Of a stretch of 64,000 nt of DNA, positions 10,750 through 54,025 are shown in pieces; positions within the stretch are counted from its first letter, which is position 1; every line of letters begins with the position of its first letter. The position numbers and the translations under genes are program-made. Location of the stretch: IMG/VR virus record IMGVR_UViG_3300023174_000042, positions 186,001 through 250,000 of that record, one strand, 5' to 3'. The notes beneath the pieces are model-generated. The model was not told where the DNA came from, searched no databases, and was given only the letters and a program-made list of their open reading frames with translations.

Positions 10750-12792
10750 ATGTTAGAATTTATGGACGAAGGAAATGACAAATCTAAAAAAAAGAGTGAT
10801 AGCACAACTCCTGTTTTAGATAATTTTAGTAAAGACTTGAATAAGTTAGCACAAGAAGGAAAATTGGATCCTGTTATCGGAAGAAAAAAAGAAATTTTAA
10901 GAATTGCTCAAATTCTTTCAAGGAGGAAAAAAAATAATCCAATCATAATCGGTGAACCTGGAGCAGGAAAAACGGCAATTGTAGAAGGTTTAGCAATGAT
11001 GATTCATAATGGTGAATGTCCCAAAAATCTTATGGATAAAAGAATTGTATCATTAGATATGAATTCATTAGTTGCCGGAACTAAATACAGAGGTCAATTT
11101 GAAGAAAGAATGAAAGTAATTATTGAAGAATTACAATTGGCTCCAAATATTATTTTATTTATAGACGAAATTCACACCATTGTAGGAGCAGGAAATAGTT
11201 CAGGTTCGTTAGACGCTTCAAACATCTTCAAACCAGCACTTTCAAGAGGAGAAATTCAGTGTATTGGTGCCACAACACTTGACGAATACCGAACAAACTT
11301 TGAAAAAGACGGAGCGCTTGAGAGACGTTTTCAGAAAGTTATAGTTGATCCATCTTCAAAAGAAGAAACATTAGAAATTTTAATGTTAAGTAAATCAAAA
11401 TATGAAGATCACCATAAAGTTACCTATGATGAAAATACTTTAAAAATATTCGTTGAATTAGCAGATCGTTATATCACAGACAGAGAATTTCCTGACAAAG
11501 CATTTGATATATTGGATGAGGTTGGAGCAAGAATGCAAATTGATGTTAAATTACCAAAAGAAATAGAAGATTTAAAAGAAGAAGCAAATAAAATCAAACA
11601 AGAAAAAATAGACGTAATTAAAAAACAAGATTACGAACAAGCGGCCGAACTTCGTGATCGTGAAAGAAATGTTATTTCTAAACTTGATTTAGAGAAGAAA
11701 AAATTTGAGGAATTTTTAAAAAATAGCAAACGAAACATACCGGAAGAACTAATTTATGAAGTAGTATCTAACATGACAAAAATTCCTATTTCTAATATTA
11801 ATGTTGATGAAAAAAATAATTTAATTAATTTGAGTTCAAATTTGAATTCGAAAGTTATTGGTCAAGAAATTGCTGTTAACAAGATTTCAAAAGCAATCAG
11901 AAGAAACAGAATGGGAATCAAAGACCCAAATAAACCGATCGGTTCGTTTATATTTTTGGGGTCAACTGGTGTTGGTAAAACTTATTTAGCAAAACAATTA
12001 GCAAAAGAAATCTTTGGAAGTCCTGATAATATGATTCGAGTTGATATGAGTGAATACCAAGAAAAACACACAATATCGCGGCTTATTGGATCACCTCCAG
12101 GGTATGTTGGTCATGATGATGGGGGTCAATTAACAGAACAAGTAAAAAACAAACCTTACTCTGTTATATTATTTGACGAGATAGAAAAAGCACACAAAGA
12201 CATTTTCTCAACACTTCTTCAGTTGTTAGATGATGGTCATATTACAGATTCATTAGGTCGTAAAATTAACTTCAAAAATTGTTTAATTATTATGACTTCC
12301 AACATTGGAGTAAAAAAATTACAAGATTTTGGAACTGGAGTTGGTTTCAAGACCACAAAAAGTGATGTCGTTTTAGAAGAAGAAAAACAAGACGTTTTGA
12401 AAAAAGAACTAAAAAAGTTTTTTGCACCTGAGTTTTTGAATAGAATTGACGATGTTATTATTTTCAATAGTTTAGAAAAAAGTCATATTGATCAAATTAC
12501 AAAACTTGAAATTGATAAACTATTAAGTAGAGTTTTAGAAAAACATTATATCTTTTCTTACAACGATGATTTAATTGAATATATTTCTAAAGTAGGTTTT
12601 GATGAAACCTTTGGAGCAAGACCAATCAAGAGAGCAATTCAAGAAAAAATTGAAGATTTAATTTCAGAAAAAATATTAATGTCGGAAATTGAAGAAAATA
12701 AGGAATATGTTTTCAAAGTTGAAAATGATGAAATCATCGTAGTTGAAAAAGAAGAAAAACCAAAAAAAAGAAGTAGGAAAAAAAGCGAATAA
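10750..12792 (+). CDS. clpC: ClpC-type AAA+ chaperone lacking the N-terminal Clp repeat domain
   Basis: LDPVIGR, Walker A GEPGAGKT and GSTGVGKT, pore loops AGTKYRG and GYVG, UVR middle domain QDYEQAAELRD, ClpP-docking-type VGF loop, FGARP. Confidence 0.93.
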   Translation: MLEFMDEGNDKSKKKSDSTTPVLDNFSKDLNKLAQEGKLDPVIGRKKEILRIAQILSRRKKNNPIIIGEPGAGKTAIVEGLAMMIHNGECPKNLMDKRIVSLDMNSLVAGTKYRGQFEERMKVIIEELQLAPNIILFIDEIHTIVGAGNSSGSLDASNIFKPALSRGEIQCIGATTLDEYRTNFEKDGALERRFQKVIVDPSSKEETLEILMLSKSKYEDHHKVTYDENTLKIFVELADRYITDREFPDKAFDILDEVGARMQIDVKLPKEIEDLKEEANKIKQEKIDVIKKQDYEQAAELRDRERNVISKLDLEKKKFEEFLKNSKRNIPEELIYEVVSNMTKIPISNINVDEKNNLINLSSNLNSKVIGQEIAVNKISKAIRRNRMGIKDPNKPIGSFIFLGSTGVGKTYLAKQLAKEIFGSPDNMIRVDMSEYQEKHTISRLIGSPPGYVGHDDGGQLTEQVKNKPYSVILFDEIEKAHKDIFSTLLQLLDDGHITDSLGRKINFKNCLIIMTSNIGVKKLQDFGTGVGFKTTKSDVVLEEEKQDVLKKELKKFFAPEFLNRIDDVIIFNSLEKSHIDQITKLEIDKLLSRVLEKHYIFSYNDDLIEYISKVGFDETFGARPIKRAIQEKIEDLISEKILMSEIEENKEYVFKVENDEIIVVEKEEKPKKRSRKKSE

Positions 12793-17594: not shown

Positions 17595-18002
17595 GGGCCT
17601 ATATCGGAATTGACGGGCGTTGGTTGAATAAAAGAAGCATGTAGGGACTAAGTTAATCTCTTTAAAAACTGACTTAGAAAACAACTGGCAATGTGCTAAA
17701 CAAAATGGAAACTCTTGGTTTACTAAGAGGTTCTGAAGTTACTGTAGCTTAAGAAGTTTACGGAAACGCGAGCCGGTTCACATACGCTCAGGAACAGAAG
17801 TGATGAAGGTGAAATACAACTGAACCATAAATCGAGTTGTCTATTGGTTTTTAATTTACGATAGTGAAGAACAAATTAAAATTGTTTTTGATCAAGTAAA
17901 AATCAAATATTTTGGGGTATTAGAAAATACCAACCTAAACATGTAGTTGTCTTTTAGACAAAACGAGCCGGACGAGGGAGTCGGAGCCCTCTAGGTCCAC
18001 CA
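17595..18002 (+). ncRNA. ssrA: tmRNA
   Basis: 5' GGGCCTA pairs with 3' TAGGTCC-A-CCA, giving the G3:U70 Ala identity pair; GGAATTGAC D-loop analog; internal tag ORF at 17687-17752; TATATTTG promoter upstream and terminator downstream. Confidence 0.93.
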
Positions 18003-18132: not shown

Positions 18133-18940
18133 ACGCTGAGATTACACGTCGTGTTTGAGAACCTTTAGAGTCATTATTGTTTCTACTCTTATCCACTTTC
18201 TTTTGGAAAGTATTTCTCAGTGCTGGTTATTTAGGTGAACCACTCCTTGAGATCTTATCTACTCTCTTACTACTCGATACTCTTCGAGGATGCCTCCCCA
18301 ATTGATCCTTGCGGGACTAGAGATCTTTTGTAAAACTACACTCGGTCTTGGGAACCTAATGTGCCACGGACAACCCGTGACTAAGTAAGCACCTTTCAAC
18401 AAGATCTGACGGACACTTTTCCTTATTTATAATTAATTGTTTAATGATAATTAAGTTTTGTGTCGTGGATTGTCGAAGTAGTGGTCCGCCACCAGAGCCA
18501 ACCCATCTTTTGAACGAGTCGATACTCAACTACTCCGTGAAATGTCCCCATTTCCATACTTCAAGAACTCTTCGAATTATTACCTTGGTGGGTAATTAAT
18601 AAGGACGATGTCAGCACCACCTGTTACTCATCTTGTCTTTCGACGTTAAGATTCCTTTGATATTGGAACTCGCAATTAAAGTGTTGGAGCACTTAGTTTT
18701 GCAAAAATCCCTACGAGTTATTCCTATTGGTGTCCCCACCTCAATTAGACGACCCACATCGCCCAATCATCTAACCACTTTCCCTACAGCGTCGCCCTCG
18801 GTACTAAAGGTTAAACGGTATCCCGCTTGTGTACTCGACCTCAATTATCCGAAGACAACTAAGACGCAAACCATATAACACAAATGGTTCACTTTATCCC
18901 ACTTTCGTGGTTTATTTTAATGGACCATACACGGCCCAAT
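18133..18940 (-). ncRNA. large structured ncRNA, GOLLD-like
   Basis: ~810 nt, GC-richer than its flanks, no credible ORF, dense hairpins with GNRA loops on the minus strand (CCAC-GAAA-GTGG, GTC-GAAA-GAC, TCCC-GCAA-GGA); own promoter and boxA. Family assignment rests on size and context only. Confidence 0.65.
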
Positions 18941-22812: not shown

Positions 22813-22848
22813 TTTTTTTCTTTTTTTTTAATTAAACAATATTTTTTG

Positions 22849-22935
22849 CGGTCTCGAAGGGAGTCGAACCCTCTTTTTCGTTTACCTACTTGCTACCGTG
22901 ACAGGGTAGTGCACCAACCATTATGCGCCGAGACC
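22849..22935 (-). tRNA. tRNA-Asp(GTC) with an unusually long variable region
   Basis: Acceptor GGTCTCG/CGAGACC, G73, anticodon arm CTACC-CTGTCAC-GGTAG, T-loop TTCGACT, ~19-nt variable region. Confidence 0.85.
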
Positions 22936-25360: not shown

Positions 25361-25816
25361 TCATCGACAATGGTAATCTGCAGCTCTTGTTGCGATTTGA
25401 TTATCAGGTTTTATATTTGCCTTATAACCCAATGACGTAACCAATCCAACGGCAGGAGATACGAGTTTTGAACTAAAATGTTTTTCTTGTGAATTATAGT
25501 CCAAATCGATCTCAATTTTTACACTTATTTTACTTGACAACCAATTTGCGACCTCAACAGAATGTTCACATTCAGTCCAAAGACGTGTCCATTTATCTTT
25601 TATTTTTCTTACCTTTTGTTTATGATAAATGTAATGAACACCCCTGTTTCCAAATCTATATGCAATTGCTGTTACATATACAGTATTTCTTCTGTGATTT
25701 TGTGAATCAGTTCCTATATGGATTTCTACATATGGACATTCTTTTAAAATATCAATTGTATGATTTACTATATCAAAAACAGCGTCTCCTTCTACTTTTT
25801 TAAATACCCTGTTCAT
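25361..25816 (-). CDS. RNase H-like YkuK (DUF458) family protein
   Basis: IHIGTDSQ...RLWTE---SVEVA...EIDLDYN...IKPD--IA--AAD. Confidence 0.85.
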   Translation of the reverse strand: MNRVFKKVEGDAVFDIVNHTIDILKECPYVEIHIGTDSQNHRRNTVYVTAIAYRFGNRGVHYIYHKQKVRKIKDKWTRLWTECEHSVEVANWLSSKISVKIEIDLDYNSQEKHFSSKLVSPAVGLVTSLGYKANIKPDNQIATRAADYHCR

Positions 25817-26543: not shown

Positions 26544-27041
26544 TTATTTTACTTCAAAAGCACATCTCATAATTTTTTTTGTTTTAACAGAATCCTCGAA
26601 GTTTCCTATAACAACACCATCTTTGATTGTAAATGCGTGTTGTCTAACTAAAACAAAAAATGTACCTTTTGGGTTTTGTTTAATAAAAGTCCCAACGGTC
26701 ATTTGTCTTAATTTGGTTTCACCTTTGATTGTAACATTATAAGACAAAGAATTAATCAATGTAGAACTTTTCCTTACTCCAACTGTGTGAATTTTTTTAT
26801 TATTGATTAATGTATTATTATCAACCATTTTTAAAAGTTTTGTTATAGTCCCAAAAGTTCCTTTTTTTGGTTTTCTTTGAAATTCTTTTGCGACATATTT
26901 GTGAGCGTCATCATAAGGAATTTCAAATGAAGATGCAAATGCTCTAACAACACAATCGTTTGTTTCTGATTTTGCGATTACAGATTCAGAATATCCTTGA
27001 ATCGCTTTTGATGTGGCTTCGTATGGGAGTTTGTTTTTCAT
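26544..27041 (-). CDS. hypothetical protein (DCVVRA...H motif, papain-like dyad possible)
   Basis: NDCVVRAFA...RQHAFTIKDG; probable start MKNKL directly after TATCTTTG. Confidence 0.65.
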   Translation of the reverse strand: MKNKLPYEATSKAIQGYSESVIAKSETNDCVVRAFASSFEIPYDDAHKYVAKEFQRKPKKGTFGTITKLLKMVDNNTLINNKKIHTVGVRKSSTLINSLSYNVTIKGETKLRQMTVGTFIKQNPKGTFFVLVRQHAFTIKDGVVIGNFEDSVKTKKIMRCAFEVK

Positions 27042-27173
27042 ACTACAAAGATACAAAAAATTTTTAAATCAAACCATATTGGTGTAATTCATATAAAAAT
27101 TTTTCATATTCCTCTGAGTTTATAAACTCTTCATGTAGTTGATAAAATATTTCTTCCATAATTTTAATATTTG

Positions 27174-27450
27174 TGATCCCGAATGGATTCGAACCATTGA
27201 CCTACTGCTTAGACATACCACTATAGTTTTCACTACCAACTTAATTGTTGTTTGTGGTCTGGACTTTCTCTTTACCTTATCTTTCGACTTAGGCACTCAC
27301 CGTCAAGTCTCTACACCTTCTTCTTTTCAGAAGCTTGGCTCGGGATTACCATTTTACAGGCTTCCCCGAATTTGATGAGTTCTATTTAATCGTTTCCAAC
27401 TAAACGCCCCCTTTGAGGCAGTTGCTCTATTCCAGCTGAGCTACGGGACC
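27174..27450 (-). tRNA. tRNA-Arg(TCT) interrupted by a group I intron
   Basis: 5' exon 27450-27416 and 3' exon 27213-27174 join to give ACTGC-CTTCTAA-GCAGT and a canonical cloverleaf. Confidence 0.92.
27214..27415 (-). mobile_element. group I intron (IC3-like, 202 nt, no ORF)
   Basis: P AAATTCGGGGAA, Q AATCCCGAGC, R GTAGAGACTTGACG, S AAGAGAAAGTCC; P1 GCCT^C/GGGGC with a U:G pair; terminal G. Confidence 0.9.
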
Positions 27451-27465
27451 ATATTTTACATTTAG

Positions 27466-27550
27466 CAGAGGAGGAGGGATTCGAACCCCCGGATCCGTAA
27501 AGATCAACGGTTTTCAAGACCGCCTCATTCGACCGCTCTGACACTCCTCT
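27466..27550 (-). tRNA. tRNA-Ser(TGA)
   Basis: GCGGT-CTTGAAA-ACCGT anticodon arm, long variable arm GATC-TTTACG-GATC, G73. Confidence 0.93.
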
Positions 27551-27588
27551 AACATTTTCAAAGAACACTAACCTACTTGATAAGTATA

Positions 27589-28353
27589 CTAGTTATTATA
27601 TAAAATATCAATCACTTCTCTATCAATAGGTGCATATTCTGTGTTACTATTTGAATTTTGATAGAAAATGCTTTCTGGATATTTTTCTGAATCATTAAAA
27701 AATCCTAATGATTGTGTAAGTTCTTCTCGTAAAATACTTTTTTGTGAAATTGTATCATCACCAGACCCAACCATTTCAACATACATTACAGATCCAGACG
27801 AAGGATATACTTCAAAATATCCCCAATTTCCTCTTAGATTTTCTTCTTGAATTTGTGGATATAAAGTTTTGAACCCTTCTTTTGAGCCTAAGAAAATAAA
27901 TGTGTTTGCTTCACTACGATTTTTTACAATCTTGATTTCAATCGTATTAATAATTTCATTGAGGTCTTTCACAATTTTATCTAATTCATCCATCATGTAT
28001 TGAGGACAAGATCCATGAACATAGATTTTAACGTCTCTTTTCCATTTGAACGCTTTATTTACACCACCGTATTCATCACGAAGACATATTTCTTTATAGT
28101 AATCCAATGCTTCCGAGGAATACGAATGTTGGTTTTGATTTTTTTGATAATCAAATGAATCTAATGAACTTCCATTTGATTTTGATAATTCTTTTTCTGT
28201 TGTTTCTAAAACACGCCTAAGAGATCCTTCATTTAAATTGAATAAAACTTCGCCAGACTTGAGGACGCGATTTTTTATTTCTTTTGTTGATAAACAGAAA
28301 GCAATTACCATAATTGCTATTAATCCTAAACTGTAGTTTACTAAATTTTTCAT
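27589..28353 (-). CDS. DUF2927-like zincin-fold protein with N-terminal anchor
   Basis: KWKRDVKIYV...SILREELTQSLG--NDS...SIF...DREVI-ILY. Confidence 0.8.
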   Translation of the reverse strand: MKNLVNYSLGLIAIMVIAFCLSTKEIKNRVLKSGEVLFNLNEGSLRRVLETTEKELSKSNGSSLDSFDYQKNQNQHSYSSEALDYYKEICLRDEYGGVNKAFKWKRDVKIYVHGSCPQYMMDELDKIVKDLNEIINTIEIKIVKNRSEANTFIFLGSKEGFKTLYPQIQEENLRGNWGYFEVYPSSGSVMYVEMVGSGDDTISQKSILREELTQSLGFFNDSEKYPESIFYQNSNSNTEYAPIDREVIDILYNN

Positions 28354-52399: not shown

Positions 52400-54025
52400 A
52401 TTTTTTTATAAAAATTTTTCCATAAATTTTTTTGTGAATACTTTATAGAGGGGATTGAACCCCCCTTTGCCCCTGACAGAAAGTCACTTATGGGGGGGAT
52501 ACGGTAGGGGGGAGGGGGGTATATAATAAGGTAGGGGCCTATGCCAAACAAGAAGGGAGGGGATATGTAGGAAGGGGTTTTTATTAAAAGTTATAAACAA
52601 TAAAGCATAAAAAAATTCCCCATCTATTAGAAAGAGATTAGATTTAAAGATCCCCTCGTTTGAGAATCATATGTAATGTTGTTTTAAAAACCTCATCTTA
52701 TTTTTTACGTATCACTTGGATGACTAAATAACTAATTCCCAACTCCACTGGCGTGTCGGTCTTCGACACCGTGGGGAAAATAAGATTTCTATTAATAAAT
52801 ATATTATTGTTTTAAAAAAGATCAATGGTTTATTTGTTTATGTCAATTTTTTTATCTACCTTTATAATGACACTAAAAATAAAGGTTAAGTCGGGCTTGA
52901 GAGAACAACAAGATGGAGCTTCCATCAGAGGCAGCCTCTCTTATAATGTTTATTGTTAATCCCCAATGTTTTTTACTGATTGTAGTTTTGAACTTGAGAT
53001 AGTGAGTGATCACGTATTAGTTTATTAACTTCTTGAAGATTCTCACTTGACAGTGGGGAATTTAAGTGAATGAATTCTATAACATCCCCCATGTCTGTAT
53101 TAGTAAGTAACAATGCTTTTTGTTTAAATCTTTTAACAGTCCCAAACAATTTTGGAGAATTATTTACATCAATTAGTTTATATTCACAATAACCTGTCAG
53201 TGTGTCATGTTTATAATTGACAAATATGGAACCATTATTTTCACTAACCTCTGTATCGAACTTTTCTATCAGGTGTATCATTAAAGTTGGTTTTTAATAT
53301 TATTTTTTTATTAAATACTTGAATATGTCAAAATGTCAGTCGGAGGGTTGAACACGACACAATCCCCTTCCCCACTTTTTTACCACAAACTCCCACAATA
53401 ATCTACCACTATTTCCCACCATAATTGGTCCTGTTGCTATACTGAGAACAAAAAAATCCCTTTTCTTGCTATCTACAGGACCACTTTTTTTACTACTCAT
53501 GTTTTCCAGCTAAAAAAGTATAGTTATAGAACAAAGTGCGTGTATAGTCCTTTAGGACGTTAGAATACAACTTCAACGACCACTTTAGTGATTTATTAAA
53601 CCCCAACTTAGTGTCTTACTTAGATCCAACTTAACCTTCGACCCACAAATTATAGACACTTAATTAGACTTGTAAACCACTTAATTATTCATATTCATCT
53701 TATGTCTATTGACATATAAATAATATAAAACATAAGTTACTAATTGATCTACTAAAACAAAGTGGTAGTAAGTGGGAACCACAATATATAAAACTTTATA
53801 AATAGATCACAAATTAGTCTTCTTTATTTCTGTCACTCTTTAATGGGGGTCTTTAATTTTGGTGGGGGGATTACATTACTGTTTAATATATGTGGTAATT
53901 AGTGGGACATATCTTTTATAGAAATGTAAGAGTATAAGATAAATTTATGAGGTGAATTCTGAAACGGAGTGTAACGTAGTGAAAGACTATGAACCGAATG
54001 AATTGATCATATACTCTTACAATTA
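52400..54025. other. gene-poor region with G-tracts, phased GTGG repeats and hairpins (candidate origin or packaging/terminus region)
   Basis: Only one ~100-aa ORF in 1.6 kb; G-runs at 52492-52578; CCAC repeats at 53372-53419; inverted repeat at 53925-54021. Confidence 0.4.
52973..53281 (-). CDS. hypothetical protein
   Basis: 102 aa ORF, no recognisable motif. Confidence 0.5.
   Translation of the reverse strand: MIHLIEKFDTEVSENNGSIFVNYKHDTLTGYCEYKLIDVNNSPKLFGTVKRFKQKALLLTNTDMGDVIEFIHLNSPLSSENLQEVNKLIRDHSLSQVQNYNQ

What the first reader, a model, noticed from the sequence alone, without database searches (positions are those of the whole stretch)
27174..27450. Compact group I intron in phage tRNA-Arg(UCU), inserted after U33
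Seen: a 202-nt ORF-less intron with P/Q/R/S elements; splicing restores the C-U-UCU-A-A loop. Known: bacterial tRNA group I introns are best known in Leu(UAA), fMet, Ile(CAU) and Arg(CCU), and the Azoarcus intron is similar in size. A phage Arg(UCU) example is uncommon and near the minimal size.
Basis: partly seen in the sequence, partly recalled or inferred. Interest (0 to 1): 0.6.

Follow-up and report, generated by a model that had tools for sequence, protein, structure and literature searches.

The report
Self-splicing intron in phage arginine tRNA
A 272-kb freshwater phage carries its only arginine tRNA gene split by a small 202-base self-splicing (group I) intron. This is a genuine but ordinary member of a known intron family, which turns out to be common in tRNA genes of uncultured phages, although a 2014 review said phage introns sit only in protein genes.

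Summary
On the minus strand, 27450-27174 is a tRNA-Arg(UCU) gene. It has a 35-nt 5' exon, a 202-nt ORF-less intron (27415-27214) and a 40-nt 3' exon. The intron follows U33.

- **Family match:** Rfam's group I model scores 64.4 bits against a cut-off of 50.
- **Fold:** P1-P9 plus the P7 pseudoknot can be drawn with all 83 pairs canonical. There is a U·G pair at the 5' splice site and a terminal G.
- **Covariation:** 38 relatives support the fold (95% of cells paired against 80% in shuffles).
- **Junction:** only one junction meets the U/terminal-G rule and restores a 7-nt loop. Intronless alleles with exactly that junction exist in DNA.

The rarity claim needs correction. The intron's 20-nt core occurs in at least 119 viral contigs, 74 of them in split tRNAs, mostly Leu(UAA) and 12 Arg(UCU). 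It also occurs in at least 120 bacterial species. Three phage lineages share the Arg(UCU)/U33 site. Family members of 183-189 nt exist, so this one is not minimal.

Splicing itself is inferred. The RNA contigs were uninformative.

Verdict: a real, probably functional IC3-type intron and a new member of a known kind. Interest is moderate, mainly because I found no paper reporting phage tRNA introns.

The parts
27174..27450 (-). Complete split tRNA-Arg(UCU) gene (277 nt; the mature tRNA would be 75 nt; no CCA is encoded)
   Evidence: ARAGORN with intron search. Acceptor, D, anticodon and T stems are all canonical. A20 is present in the D loop (read from the sequence).
27416..27450 (-). 5' exon (35 nt), ending in U33 at 27416
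   Evidence: The intronless allele L253:5158-5234(-) is identical over the 29 nt up to U33 and then continues directly with the 3' exon sequence.
27214..27415 (-). Group I intron, 202 nt, no ORF. The first base is C27415 and the last is G27214 (terminal G).
   Evidence: RF00028 at 64.4 bits; unique junction consistent with the U/terminal-G rule; covariation in relatives.
27174..27213 (-). 3' exon (40 nt), starting with anticodon U34 C35 U36 (27213-27211)
   Evidence: The loose end of a DNA contig in run X4 joins 27213 directly to the end of the 5' exon.
27405..27420 (-). P1. Exon bases U29-U33 (27420-27416) plus intron C27415 pair with the internal guide 27410-27405. The splice-site pair is U27416·G27409. 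The loop is AAAG.
   Evidence: Read from the sequence and checked by script. The internal guide matches its own exon class with 5 contiguous pairs, against 1-4 pairs with exons of other classes.
27385..27404 (-). P2, 8 bp with a GAAA tetraloop (27396-27393)
   Evidence: Nine of 10 P2 pairs show compensatory changes in alignment A1.
27295..27380 (-). P3 (27380-27374 with 27301-27295), enclosing P4 (27369-27364/27345-27340), P5 (27361-27359/27350-27348), P6 (27338-27337/27317-27316) and P6a (27333-27329/27324-27320, GAAA loop)
   Evidence: Alignment A1: P3 100% paired with 4 of 6 pairs compensatory; the combined P4/P5 helix 96.8% paired; P6a 93.2% paired with all 4 pairs compensatory.
27261..27311 (-). 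P7 pseudoknot (G27311 and 27309-27306 pair with 27265-27261; A27310 is bulged). It is the presumed guanosine-binding helix. It encloses the P3 3' strand and P8 (27294-27291/27277-27274 and 27288-27286/27281-27279, GAAA loop).
   Evidence: P7 is nearly invariant: 4 of its 5 pairs never vary across 38 relatives (99.5% of cells paired), so it has conservation but no covariation. P8 has 5 of 6 pairs compensatory.
27300..27319 (-). 20-nt core (3' end of P6, J6/7, P7 5' strand, J7/3, start of the P3 3' strand), used as an exact probe
   Evidence: Exact matches in at least 119 viral stretches and at least 120 bacterial genome stretches.
27217..27258 (-). P9 (27258-27254/27221-27217), with P9a (27250-27247/27240-27237) and P9b (27235-27232/27227-27224, GAAA loop)
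   Evidence: P9, P9a and P9b are 97-99.5% paired, with compensatory changes.
27465..27550 (-). tRNA-Ser(UGA), 14 nt upstream on the same strand; probably co-transcribed
27583..27622 (-). Two overlapping sigma-70-like promoter matches upstream of the tRNA-Ser/tRNA-Arg pair (consensus matches only)
   Evidence: 10 of 12 hexamer matches each; 6 sites in the region against 2.8 expected.

Best explanation
The element is a splicing-competent, ORF-less group I intron of the compact tRNA-resident type (IC3-like, Azoarcus/Anabaena kind). It sits between U33 and U34 of the only tRNA-Arg gene of a 272-kb, 30% GC freshwater tailed phage.

Proposed mechanism (inferred from the family):
1. The tRNA-Ser/tRNA-Arg pair is transcribed from the minus strand.
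2. The intron folds into P1-P9 with the P3/P7 pseudoknot.
3. The internal guide (27410-27405) pairs with the end of the 5' exon, so that U33 forms the U·G wobble.
4. A free guanosine bound in P7 attacks after U33.
5. The terminal G27214 then takes the guanosine site. The 3' exon start can pair with G27410, G27411 and A27412 (P10).
6. The 3'-OH of U33 attacks after G27214, giving a 75-nt tRNA with the loop C-U-UCU-A-A and a free 202-nt intron.

The tRNA reads AGA, the phage's dominant arginine codon, so splicing must work for the gene to be useful.

The intron belongs to a clade of phage tRNA introns that sit in different isoacceptors with matching internal guides. This points to past movement between tRNA genes, by reverse splicing or recombination, rather than endonuclease homing.

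Shown here: sequence, fold, family membership, covariation, a unique junction, empty-site alleles and conservation across lineages. Inferred: catalysis, splicing in vivo and the route of mobility.
For: - RF00028 scores 64.4 bits against a cut-off of 50.
- ARAGORN finds a clean cloverleaf once the 202 nt are removed.
- There is a single U/terminal-G-consistent junction.
- All 83 curated pairs (tRNA stems plus P1-P9 and P7) are canonical in the window.
- In the 38-sequence alignment A1, 95.4% of cells are paired, against 80.0% in shuffles and 28-42% with slid partners. Thirty-nine of 60 pairs have changes on both sides. The covariation score is 0.451 against 0.168, with 0 of 500 shuffles as high (RNAalifold).
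- Other phage lineages with the same Arg(UCU)/U33 site keep the fold. L034 (90% identical) has 4 compensatory and 5 one-sided changes, one of the compensatory changes being in the anticodon stem and one in the T stem. L244 has 12 compensatory and 6 one-sided changes.
- The internal guide pairs with its own exon class over 5 contiguous bp. Family-wide, own-exon pairing averages 3.6 bp against 1.8 bp cross-class.
- Empty-site alleles exist in DNA: L253 and loose ends of contigs in runs X2 and X4.
- The intron-bearing allele is in an independent study's contig with 42 differences over 1099 nt.
- AGA is 73.5% of Arg codons in ORFs of 200 aa or more, and this is the genome's only tRNA-Arg.
- Portal and large terminase genes in the window confirm a tailed phage.
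Against: - There is no direct evidence of splicing. The two metatranscriptome runs are assembled contigs. The only exon-exon joints seen also occur in DNA runs, so they are intronless genes of other organisms, not spliced RNA.
- P7 and much of the core are invariant, so they carry conservation but no covariation.
- The full 5-bp P1 uses tRNA positions 29-31. It therefore competes with three anticodon-stem pairs, and which pairing forms is not known.
- One natural variant (L254) has two uncompensated G-to-A changes in the 5' strand of P4.
- Some IMG/VR 'viral' contigs and metagenome-assembled-genome contigs may be misclassified.
Confidence: 0.85

Rival explanations
1. The intron is a decaying, inactive relic, so the tRNA-Arg gene is a pseudogene that merely retains group I-like sequence.
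For: No RNA evidence of splicing. ORF-less introns have no means of re-invasion, and variant L254 carries uncompensated P4 changes.
Against: Every core helix is intact. Lineages 10% or more diverged keep the pairs through compensatory changes, in the tRNA stems as well. The fold has family-wide covariation. This is the only tRNA for 73.5% of the phage's Arg codons. The gene is conserved in at least 11 further contigs from several studies.
Confidence: 0.06
2. The intron splices, but at a different junction from the one proposed (for example after U34, as in the tRNA-Leu(UAA) relatives), giving a different anticodon loop.
For: The closest non-Arg relatives and six other phage Arg(UCU) genes are split after U34. 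ARAGORN's junction calls are heuristic and were wrong for several relatives.
Against: Only the U33|U34 split has U before the 5' site and G at the intron's end while restoring a 7-nt loop. The Rfam alignment places the model's conserved U·G on U27416 and G27409. The intronless alleles carry exactly the predicted joined sequence.
Confidence: 0.03
3. The split gene is an assembly artefact: a chimera of a tRNA and an intron from another organism.
For: The genome is a metagenome assembly.
Against: The same structure appears in independent assemblies and samples, with strain-level differences (L060, L106, L250, L252, L254; X4 contig 26544-27642). Two further phage lineages share the same architecture (L034 group; L244/L245).
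Confidence: 0.01
4. The intron is not merely tolerated but useful to the phage. It might delay or gate the supply of tRNA-Arg(UCU), shield the precursor's anticodon loop from host anticodon nucleases, or break up a DNA target of nucleases or CRISPR. This adds to the main reading rather than replacing it.
For: The intron is retained across three diverged phage lineages in a tRNA the phage depends on. Introns recur in many phage isoacceptors.
Against: Nothing here tests benefit. The preference for tRNAs with U33/U34 is explained by the intron's need for a U before the splice site. Efficient self-splicing makes neutral persistence enough to explain retention. Intronless Arg(UCU) genes are also found in phage contigs (L033, L052, L070, L120).
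Confidence: 0.12

Closest known systems
Azoarcus sp. BH72 tRNA-Ile(CAU) group I intron (IC3; 205 nt)
   Same: Compact, ORF-less intron in a tRNA anticodon loop, almost the same size (202 against 205 nt; PMC13168695). No P5abc extension, and GNRA tetraloops on peripheral helices. Betaproteobacterial tRNA(CAU) introns of 202-214 nt at the same post-anticodon site share the window's 20-nt core exactly. From memory only (not checked), the Azoarcus core differs from this 20-mer at one base.
   Different: The host gene is Arg(UCU), not Ile(CAU). The insertion is after U33, not after the anticodon (36/37). The genome is a phage, not a bacterium. The exon part of P1 can reach 5 bp, against about 3 bp.
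[quoted passage not shown]
   Same: The nearest sequence relatives outside the Arg(UCU) group are tRNA-Leu(UAA) introns: 86% identity to L013, 85% to the 735-kb phage LR756501 (L002). The intron clade is sister to Bacteroidota tRNA-Leu(UAA) introns in a quick tree (SH-aLRT 82-89).
   Different: Leu(UAA) introns sit after U34, and this one sits one base earlier. The internal guide is changed to match the Arg anticodon stem (GGGCG instead of GAGU).
Agrobacterium and other alpha-proteobacterial tRNA-Arg(CCU) introns
   Same: A group I intron in an arginine tRNA. Thirteen bacterial CCU genes share the same 20-nt core. From memory, Paquin et al. 1999 inferred intron transposition between tRNA genes in that system, as I infer here.
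   Different: A different isoacceptor (CCU) and a different site (after the anticodon). These are bacterial chromosomes.
Putative group I introns in tRNA-Arg(UCU) of Beggiatoa 'BOGUAY' and Thiomargarita nelsonii
   Same: The same isoacceptor, interrupted by a putative group I intron (PMC4853749).
   Different: These are bacterial, and about 250 nt by the published coordinates. The insertion site and relatedness could not be checked because the primary paper is not held. In my bacterial scan, the one Arg(UCU) hit (L230) is split after the anticodon and is not close to the window's intron.
Classical phage group I introns (T4 td/nrdB/sunY, Twort, SPO1, Bastille, crAss-like helicase introns)
   Same: [quoted passage not shown] The same core subfamily also splits capsid genes of pelagiphages and helicase genes of crAss-like phages.
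   Different: Those interrupt protein-coding genes and often carry homing endonuclease ORFs. This one interrupts a tRNA and has no ORF.

Membership tests
Group I intron (Rfam RF00028) | Covariance-model score at or above the curated gathering score | tested here: met
   64.4 bits against 50, full model 1-253, E 6e-16 and 4.9e-17. It was missed by the filters of the 64-kb run.
Group I intron (Rfam RF00028) | 5' splice site after a U that forms a U·G wobble with the internal guide in P1 | tested here: met
   U27416·G27409, flanked by C-G pairs on both sides. The guide matches its own exon class better than other classes.
Group I intron (Rfam RF00028) | Terminal guanosine as the last intron base | tested here: met
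   G27214. It is the only loop split with U before the 5' site and G at the intron's end.
Group I intron (Rfam RF00028) | Conserved core: P3-P8 with the P3/P7 pseudoknot, a bulged base in P7, and the J8/7 and J4/5 joiners | tested here: met
   All pairs are canonical in the window. P3, P4, P5, P6a and P8 show compensatory changes. P7 is nearly invariant, with 4 of its 5 pairs unchanged in 38 relatives.
Group I intron (Rfam RF00028) | Guanosine-dependent self-splicing | not testable with these tools
   This needs in vitro transcription and a GTP chase. The RNA contigs gave no junction specific to RNA.
IC3-type tRNA anticodon-loop introns (Azoarcus/Anabaena kind) | Located in the anticodon loop of a bacterial-type tRNA gene; precise removal restores a 7-nt loop | tested here: met
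   Empty-site alleles.
IC3-type tRNA anticodon-loop introns (Azoarcus/Anabaena kind) | Compact architecture: P2 present, no P5abc, short P5 and P6, P9 with extra hairpins, GNRA loops, no ORF | tested here: met
   Hand-curated fold verified by script. GAAA loops cap P2, P6a, P8 and P9b. No ORF of endonuclease size. Tetraloop-receptor contacts were not modelled.
IC3-type tRNA anticodon-loop introns (Azoarcus/Anabaena kind) | Sequence homology to the founding members' classes (Leu UAA, Ile/Met CAU, Arg CCU) | tested here: met
   The exact 20-nt core is shared with bacterial UAA, CAU and CCU tRNA introns. Identity to viral Leu(UAA) introns is 85-86%. No named reference sequence (Azoarcus, Anabaena) was available for direct alignment, so the IC3 label rests on these proxies.
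Functional tRNA-Arg(UCU) | Canonical cloverleaf, anticodon UCU, A20 in the D loop (the main ArgRS identity element in E. coli, by established knowledge) | tested here: met
   ARAGORN cloverleaf. All four stems are canonical. A20, C35 and U36 are read directly from the sequence. Aminoacylation is not testable.
Mobile group I intron with homing endonuclease | An intron-encoded LAGLIDADG, GIY-YIG, HNH or His-Cys box ORF | tested here: not met
   The 202-nt intron has no such ORF. The flanking genes scanned in Pfam gave no endonuclease domain, only DUF2927 and an RNase H-like domain.

The most novel reading that the evidence does not exclude
Phage tRNA genes are a large, essentially undescribed reservoir of ORF-less IC3 group I introns. 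These introns hop between isoacceptors (Leu UAA, Arg UCU at two sites, Lys UUU, Ser UGA, Thr UGU, Met/Ile CAU, possibly suppressor tRNAs) by changing their internal guide. Their retention in tRNAs the phage depends on reflects a benefit, such as timing of tRNA supply or protection of the anticodon loop or its DNA from host nucleases, rather than neutral parasitism. The reservoir part is already visible in my scans. The benefit part is untested.
Probability: 0.12. Interest if true: 0.7.

Novelty: new member of a known kind. Interest (0 to 1): 0.4.

Why it matters
**Annotation.** Standard tRNA callers and a whole-window Rfam scan both missed this gene. Without the intron call, the phage appears to lack any tRNA for its most used arginine codon. 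The same blind spot hides split tRNAs in published genomes: Agrobacterium phage Atu_ph07 has a 'hypothetical protein' annotated over one, and the record of the 735-kb phage LR756501 carries no annotation at all.

**Intron biology.** The 2014 review of bacterial group I introns stated that all phage introns known then were in protein-coding genes despite the many phage tRNA genes. This locus and its dozens of relatives show that the generalisation does not hold in uncultured phages. They also give a natural series of one ribozyme scaffold retargeted to different tRNA contexts.

**Ribozyme work.** The family offers several very small natural group I introns (183-209 nt) as candidates for minimal-ribozyme or RNA-circularisation studies.

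Tried and rejected
- **Default tools.** Default ARAGORN and the 64-kb Rfam gathering scan did not report the gene or the intron. Only the intron-aware and narrow runs did.
- **RNA evidence.** One run search and one read-laying were allowed. The two metatranscriptomes are kept as assembled contigs. They show a related unspliced precursor fragment and exon-exon joints that also occur in DNA runs. This is no evidence for or against splicing.
- **Literature.** Nine searches and nine papers searched for relevant passages found no report of a group I intron in a phage tRNA gene. The library lacks most subscription journals, so this is not proof of absence. MacGregor 2013a and 2013c, on the Beggiatoa Arg(UCU) intron, are not held.
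- **ARAGORN junctions for relatives.** These were often inconsistent with group I rules, for example introns ending in C or T. I re-derived junctions with a rule requiring U before the 5' site and G at the intron's end. Ambiguous cases were left out of the alignment and the tree.
- **False positives.** An ARAGORN 'tRNA-Glu with 106-nt intron' at 52440-52634(-) is a weak false positive. The 'terminator-like' hit at 27420-27405 is simply the P1 hairpin.
- **Joined exons.** Exon searches used the 5' exon alone. The intronless junction was read from natural alleles.

Full report
**1. What is at the coordinates**

Read on the minus strand, 27450-27174 begins with a normal tRNA 5' half: acceptor strand, D arm with A20, and the 5' strand of the anticodon stem followed by C32 and U33. 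It ends with the matching 3' half, which starts with U34 C35 U36 A37 A38. Between the halves lie 202 nt.

Default ARAGORN does not report the gene. With intron search it calls tRNA-Arg(tct) with a 202-nt intron inserted between gene positions 35 and 36. The parts are:
- 5' exon: 27450-27416
- intron: 27415-27214
- 3' exon: 27213-27174

No CCA is encoded. tRNA-Ser(UGA) lies 14 nt upstream on the same strand. Two sigma-70-like promoter matches lie upstream of that.

**2. Is it a group I intron?**

The whole-window Rfam run at gathering thresholds listed GOLLD, a tmRNA and six tRNAs but no intron. An 801-nt search found RF00028 at 27425-27239(-) with 64.4 bits against a gathering score of 50, E 6e-16, over the full model. 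A whole-genome search gave the same single hit. The miss in the large run is therefore a filter effect.

The Rfam alignment puts the model's conserved U·G pair on U27416 and G27409.

I drew the fold by hand and checked it by script. It comprises P1, P2, P3, P4, P5, P6/P6a, P7 (a pseudoknot with bulged A27310), P8, P9/P9a/P9b and the terminal G27214. All 83 pairs, tRNA stems included, are canonical. GAAA tetraloops cap P2, P6a, P8 and P9b.

A three-pair P10 between the 3' exon start (27213-27211) and G27410, G27411 and A27412 is possible.

The full precursor folds with z = -4.07 against shuffles. No ORF of endonuclease size lies in the intron.

**3. Is the junction right?**

Group I splicing needs a U before the 5' site and a G as the last intron base. 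Of the eight ways to split the 7-nt anticodon loop between the exons, only the U33|U34 split meets both conditions. It yields C-U-UCU-A-A.

Natural intronless alleles show the same joined sequence:
- L253, a 13.7-kb, 40% GC metagenome contig with six tRNAs, has a tRNA-Arg(UCU) identical over the 29 nt up to U33 that runs straight on into the 3' exon sequence.
- DNA contigs of runs X2 and X4 show the same joint as loose ends at 27416 and 27213.

These joints are in DNA, so they are empty-site alleles, not spliced RNA.

Exon searches used the 5' exon alone.

**4. Relatives and covariation**

The intron core is 85% identical to a stretch of the 735-kb phage LR756501, where it splits a tRNA-Leu(UAA) after U34. 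It is 77-85% identical to introns in capsid genes of pelagiphages.

Intron-aware ARAGORN places 74 of them in split tRNA genes.

After re-deriving junctions with the U/terminal-G rule, the contexts are:
- mostly Leu(UAA) after U34
- Arg(UCU) after U33: L034, L036, L037, L060, L094, L106
- Arg(UCU) after U34: L025, L035, L069, L095, L105, L113
- Lys(UUU), Ser(UGA), Thr(UGU) and Met/Ile(CAU) after the anticodon
- a few unresolved cases

An alignment of 38 distinct introns with 10-nt exon flanks (A1) gives an RNAalifold consensus matching the group I fold. Of its 56 predicted pairs, 38 show compensatory change.

I then tested my curated structure including P7:

| Measure | Observed | Shuffled | Slid partners |
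|---|---|---|---|
| Cells paired | 95.4% | 80.0% | 28-42% |
| Covariation score | 0.451 | 0.168 | 0.06-0.10 |

Thirty-nine of 60 pairs change on both sides, and 0 of 500 shuffles reach the observed values.

**5. The Arg(UCU)/U33 group**

- L060 and L106 are 99.5% and 99.0% identical to the window's intron.
- The L034 group is 90% identical.
- L244/L245 form a third, more diverged lineage with a 196-nt intron.
- Metagenome contigs L250, L252 and L254 are further strain variants.

Against the window's structure, L034 has 4 compensatory and 5 one-sided pair-keeping changes. One of the compensatory changes is a C-G to U-A swap in the anticodon stem and another is in the T stem. L244 has 12 compensatory and 6 one-sided changes. 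The 'broken' pairs are mostly in the length-variable P6a and P9a hairpins.

Variant L254 has two uncompensated G-to-A changes in P4.

The window's internal guide pairs with its own exon over 5 contiguous bp, against 1-4 bp with exons of other classes. Across the family, own-exon pairing averages 3.6 bp against 1.8 bp cross-class.

The 5-bp P1 uses tRNA positions 29-33. It therefore competes with three anticodon-stem pairs, and a shorter P1 with the stem intact is the alternative. From memory, the Anabaena pre-tRNA needs the anticodon-stem pairing of its exons for splicing (Zaug et al. 1993, listed in PMC3984707).

**6. Bacteria**

The same 20-mer occurs in at least 120 bacterial species' genomes across many phyla. 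Ninety-six of the 120 stretches are in split tRNAs:
- CAU after U33: 28
- UAA after U34: 19
- CAU after the anticodon: 17 (the site of the Azoarcus intron)
- CCU after the anticodon: 13 (the isoacceptor known from Agrobacterium)
- Arg(UCU): 1 (L230), split after the anticodon

Insertion after U33 is therefore ordinary for this family. In these truncated scans, Arg(UCU) split at U33 was seen only in phage contigs.

In a quick maximum-likelihood tree of 137 introns, the window's group (SH-aLRT 94) lies in a viral clade with Leu(UAA), Ser(UGA) and the U34-type Arg(UCU) introns. That clade is sister to Bacteroidota tRNA-Leu(UAA) introns (support 82-89). L244 falls elsewhere, unresolved. Support is moderate, so this is only a pointer to movement between phage tRNA genes.

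**7. Genome context**

- The window is 186001-250000 of a 272,576-bp IMG/VR virus record estimated 93% complete.
- The genome is 30.2% GC.
- Portal and large terminase genes lie in the window.
- Near-identical DNA occurs in freshwater and lake metagenomes of 13 studies.
- The genome has seven credible tRNAs, and this is the only tRNA-Arg. AGA makes up 73.5% of Arg codons in ORFs of 200 aa or more. An unspliceable gene would therefore be costly, which argues for function.
- The flanking ORFs show no homing endonuclease domain.

**8. RNA evidence**

Two metatranscriptome runs hold parts of the region, but only as assembled contigs. One contig covers the 5' exon plus the first 58 nt of a related intron, so it is either an unspliced precursor or contaminating DNA. 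No joint specific to RNA was seen. Splicing therefore remains an inference from family membership and conservation.

**9. Comparison with what is known**

The element works like the Azoarcus tRNA-Ile and cyanobacterial tRNA-Leu introns, and it passes every membership test I could run. The exception is catalysis, which cannot be tested here.

The IC3 label rests on architecture and on homology to introns in the classical IC3 host genes. No named reference sequence was available for direct alignment.

Literature points:
- Putative Arg(UCU) group I introns were already noted in Beggiatoa and Thiomargarita (PMC4853749).
- The review PMC3984707 states that all phage introns observed to that date were in protein-coding genes despite the many phage-encoded tRNA genes.
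- I found no later paper reporting phage tRNA introns. The huge-phage paper does not mention introns, and the jumbo-phage review mentions them only in protein-coding genes.
- The library is incomplete, so this is not proof that no such report exists.
- Cultured Agrobacterium phage Atu_ph07 carries an unannotated split tRNA-Leu(UAA) with a 278-nt intron, under a 'hypothetical protein' CDS.

**10. Verdict**

This locus is a new member of a known kind: an IC3-type tRNA intron in a new host gene, site and genome combination. By sequence data it is neither rare nor the smallest of its family.

Interest is moderate (0.4). The single locus is ordinary. The wider pattern it exposes, one ribozyme scaffold spread over many phage tRNA isoacceptors and invisible to routine annotation, is the part worth following up.

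Noticed in passing
window 18133-18537 (-) and 17595-18002 (+): A full-length GOLLD RNA (309 bits) lies next to a tmRNA-like gene (64.9 bits against a cut-off of 47; patchy alignment). ARAGORN did not call the tmRNA. Both sit a few kb from the tRNA cluster of this phage.
   Followed up: no
window 22848-22935 (-): tRNA-Asp(GUC) of 88 nt with a long variable arm, which is unusual for an Asp tRNA (Rfam 45.2 bits; ARAGORN drawing).
   Followed up: partly
window 1-64000 (method): The 64-kb Rfam gathering run missed an intron that scores 14 bits above the cut-off. The 801-nt and whole-genome runs found it. Default ARAGORN also skips the gene. Split tRNAs of this kind are probably undercounted in phage annotation.
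   Followed up: yes
L246 (MF403008.1 112439-113488), gene at L246:238-599: Cultured Agrobacterium jumbo phage Atu_ph07 has a tRNA-Leu(UAA) split by a 278-nt group I intron. The record annotates a 'hypothetical protein' CDS over it.
   Followed up: partly
L002 (LR756501.1 189725-191061), gene at L002:529-819: The 735-kb 'largest phage' genome carries a tRNA-Leu(UAA) split after U34 by a 205-nt intron that is 85% identical in its core to the window's intron. The record has no annotation.
   Followed up: partly
L057, L090, L093, L104, L121 (viral contigs): These are tRNAs of class I size (75-76 nt). ARAGORN calls them Phe(GAA) with an intron ending in C. A junction obeying the group I rule gives anticodon UAA instead. 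Either the introns end in a base other than G, or these are class-I-shaped tRNAs reading UUA. This is unresolved.
   Followed up: partly
L116, L027, L070, L008, L109 (viral contigs): ARAGORN reads some split phage tRNAs as suppressor-like or odd anticodons (UUA, CUA, UCA). After applying the junction rule, L008 and L109 become Lys(UUU), L070 becomes CGA, L116 stays UUA and L027 has no rule-consistent junction. Group I introns in suppressor tRNAs of recoded phages remain possible but are not shown.
   Followed up: partly
L003 (Pelagibacter phage HTVC120P) and L004 (KM23-C739): The same intron subfamily splits the major capsid gene of marine podophages, which are annotated as two separate 'capsid protein' CDSs. 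RF00028 scores 48.6 and 78 bits.
   Followed up: partly
L254 (Ga0214917_10002162), equivalent to window 27365 and 27364: A natural variant of the window's intron has two adjacent G-to-A changes in the 5' strand of P4 with no compensating change. It may be a weakened allele or a sequencing error.
   Followed up: no
window 10750-12792 (+); 27589-28353 (-); 25361-25816 (-): A Lon-like ATP-dependent protease (phrog_4871, E 1e-236). A DUF2927 protein lies directly upstream of the tRNA pair, and an RNase H-like protein lies downstream.
   Followed up: no
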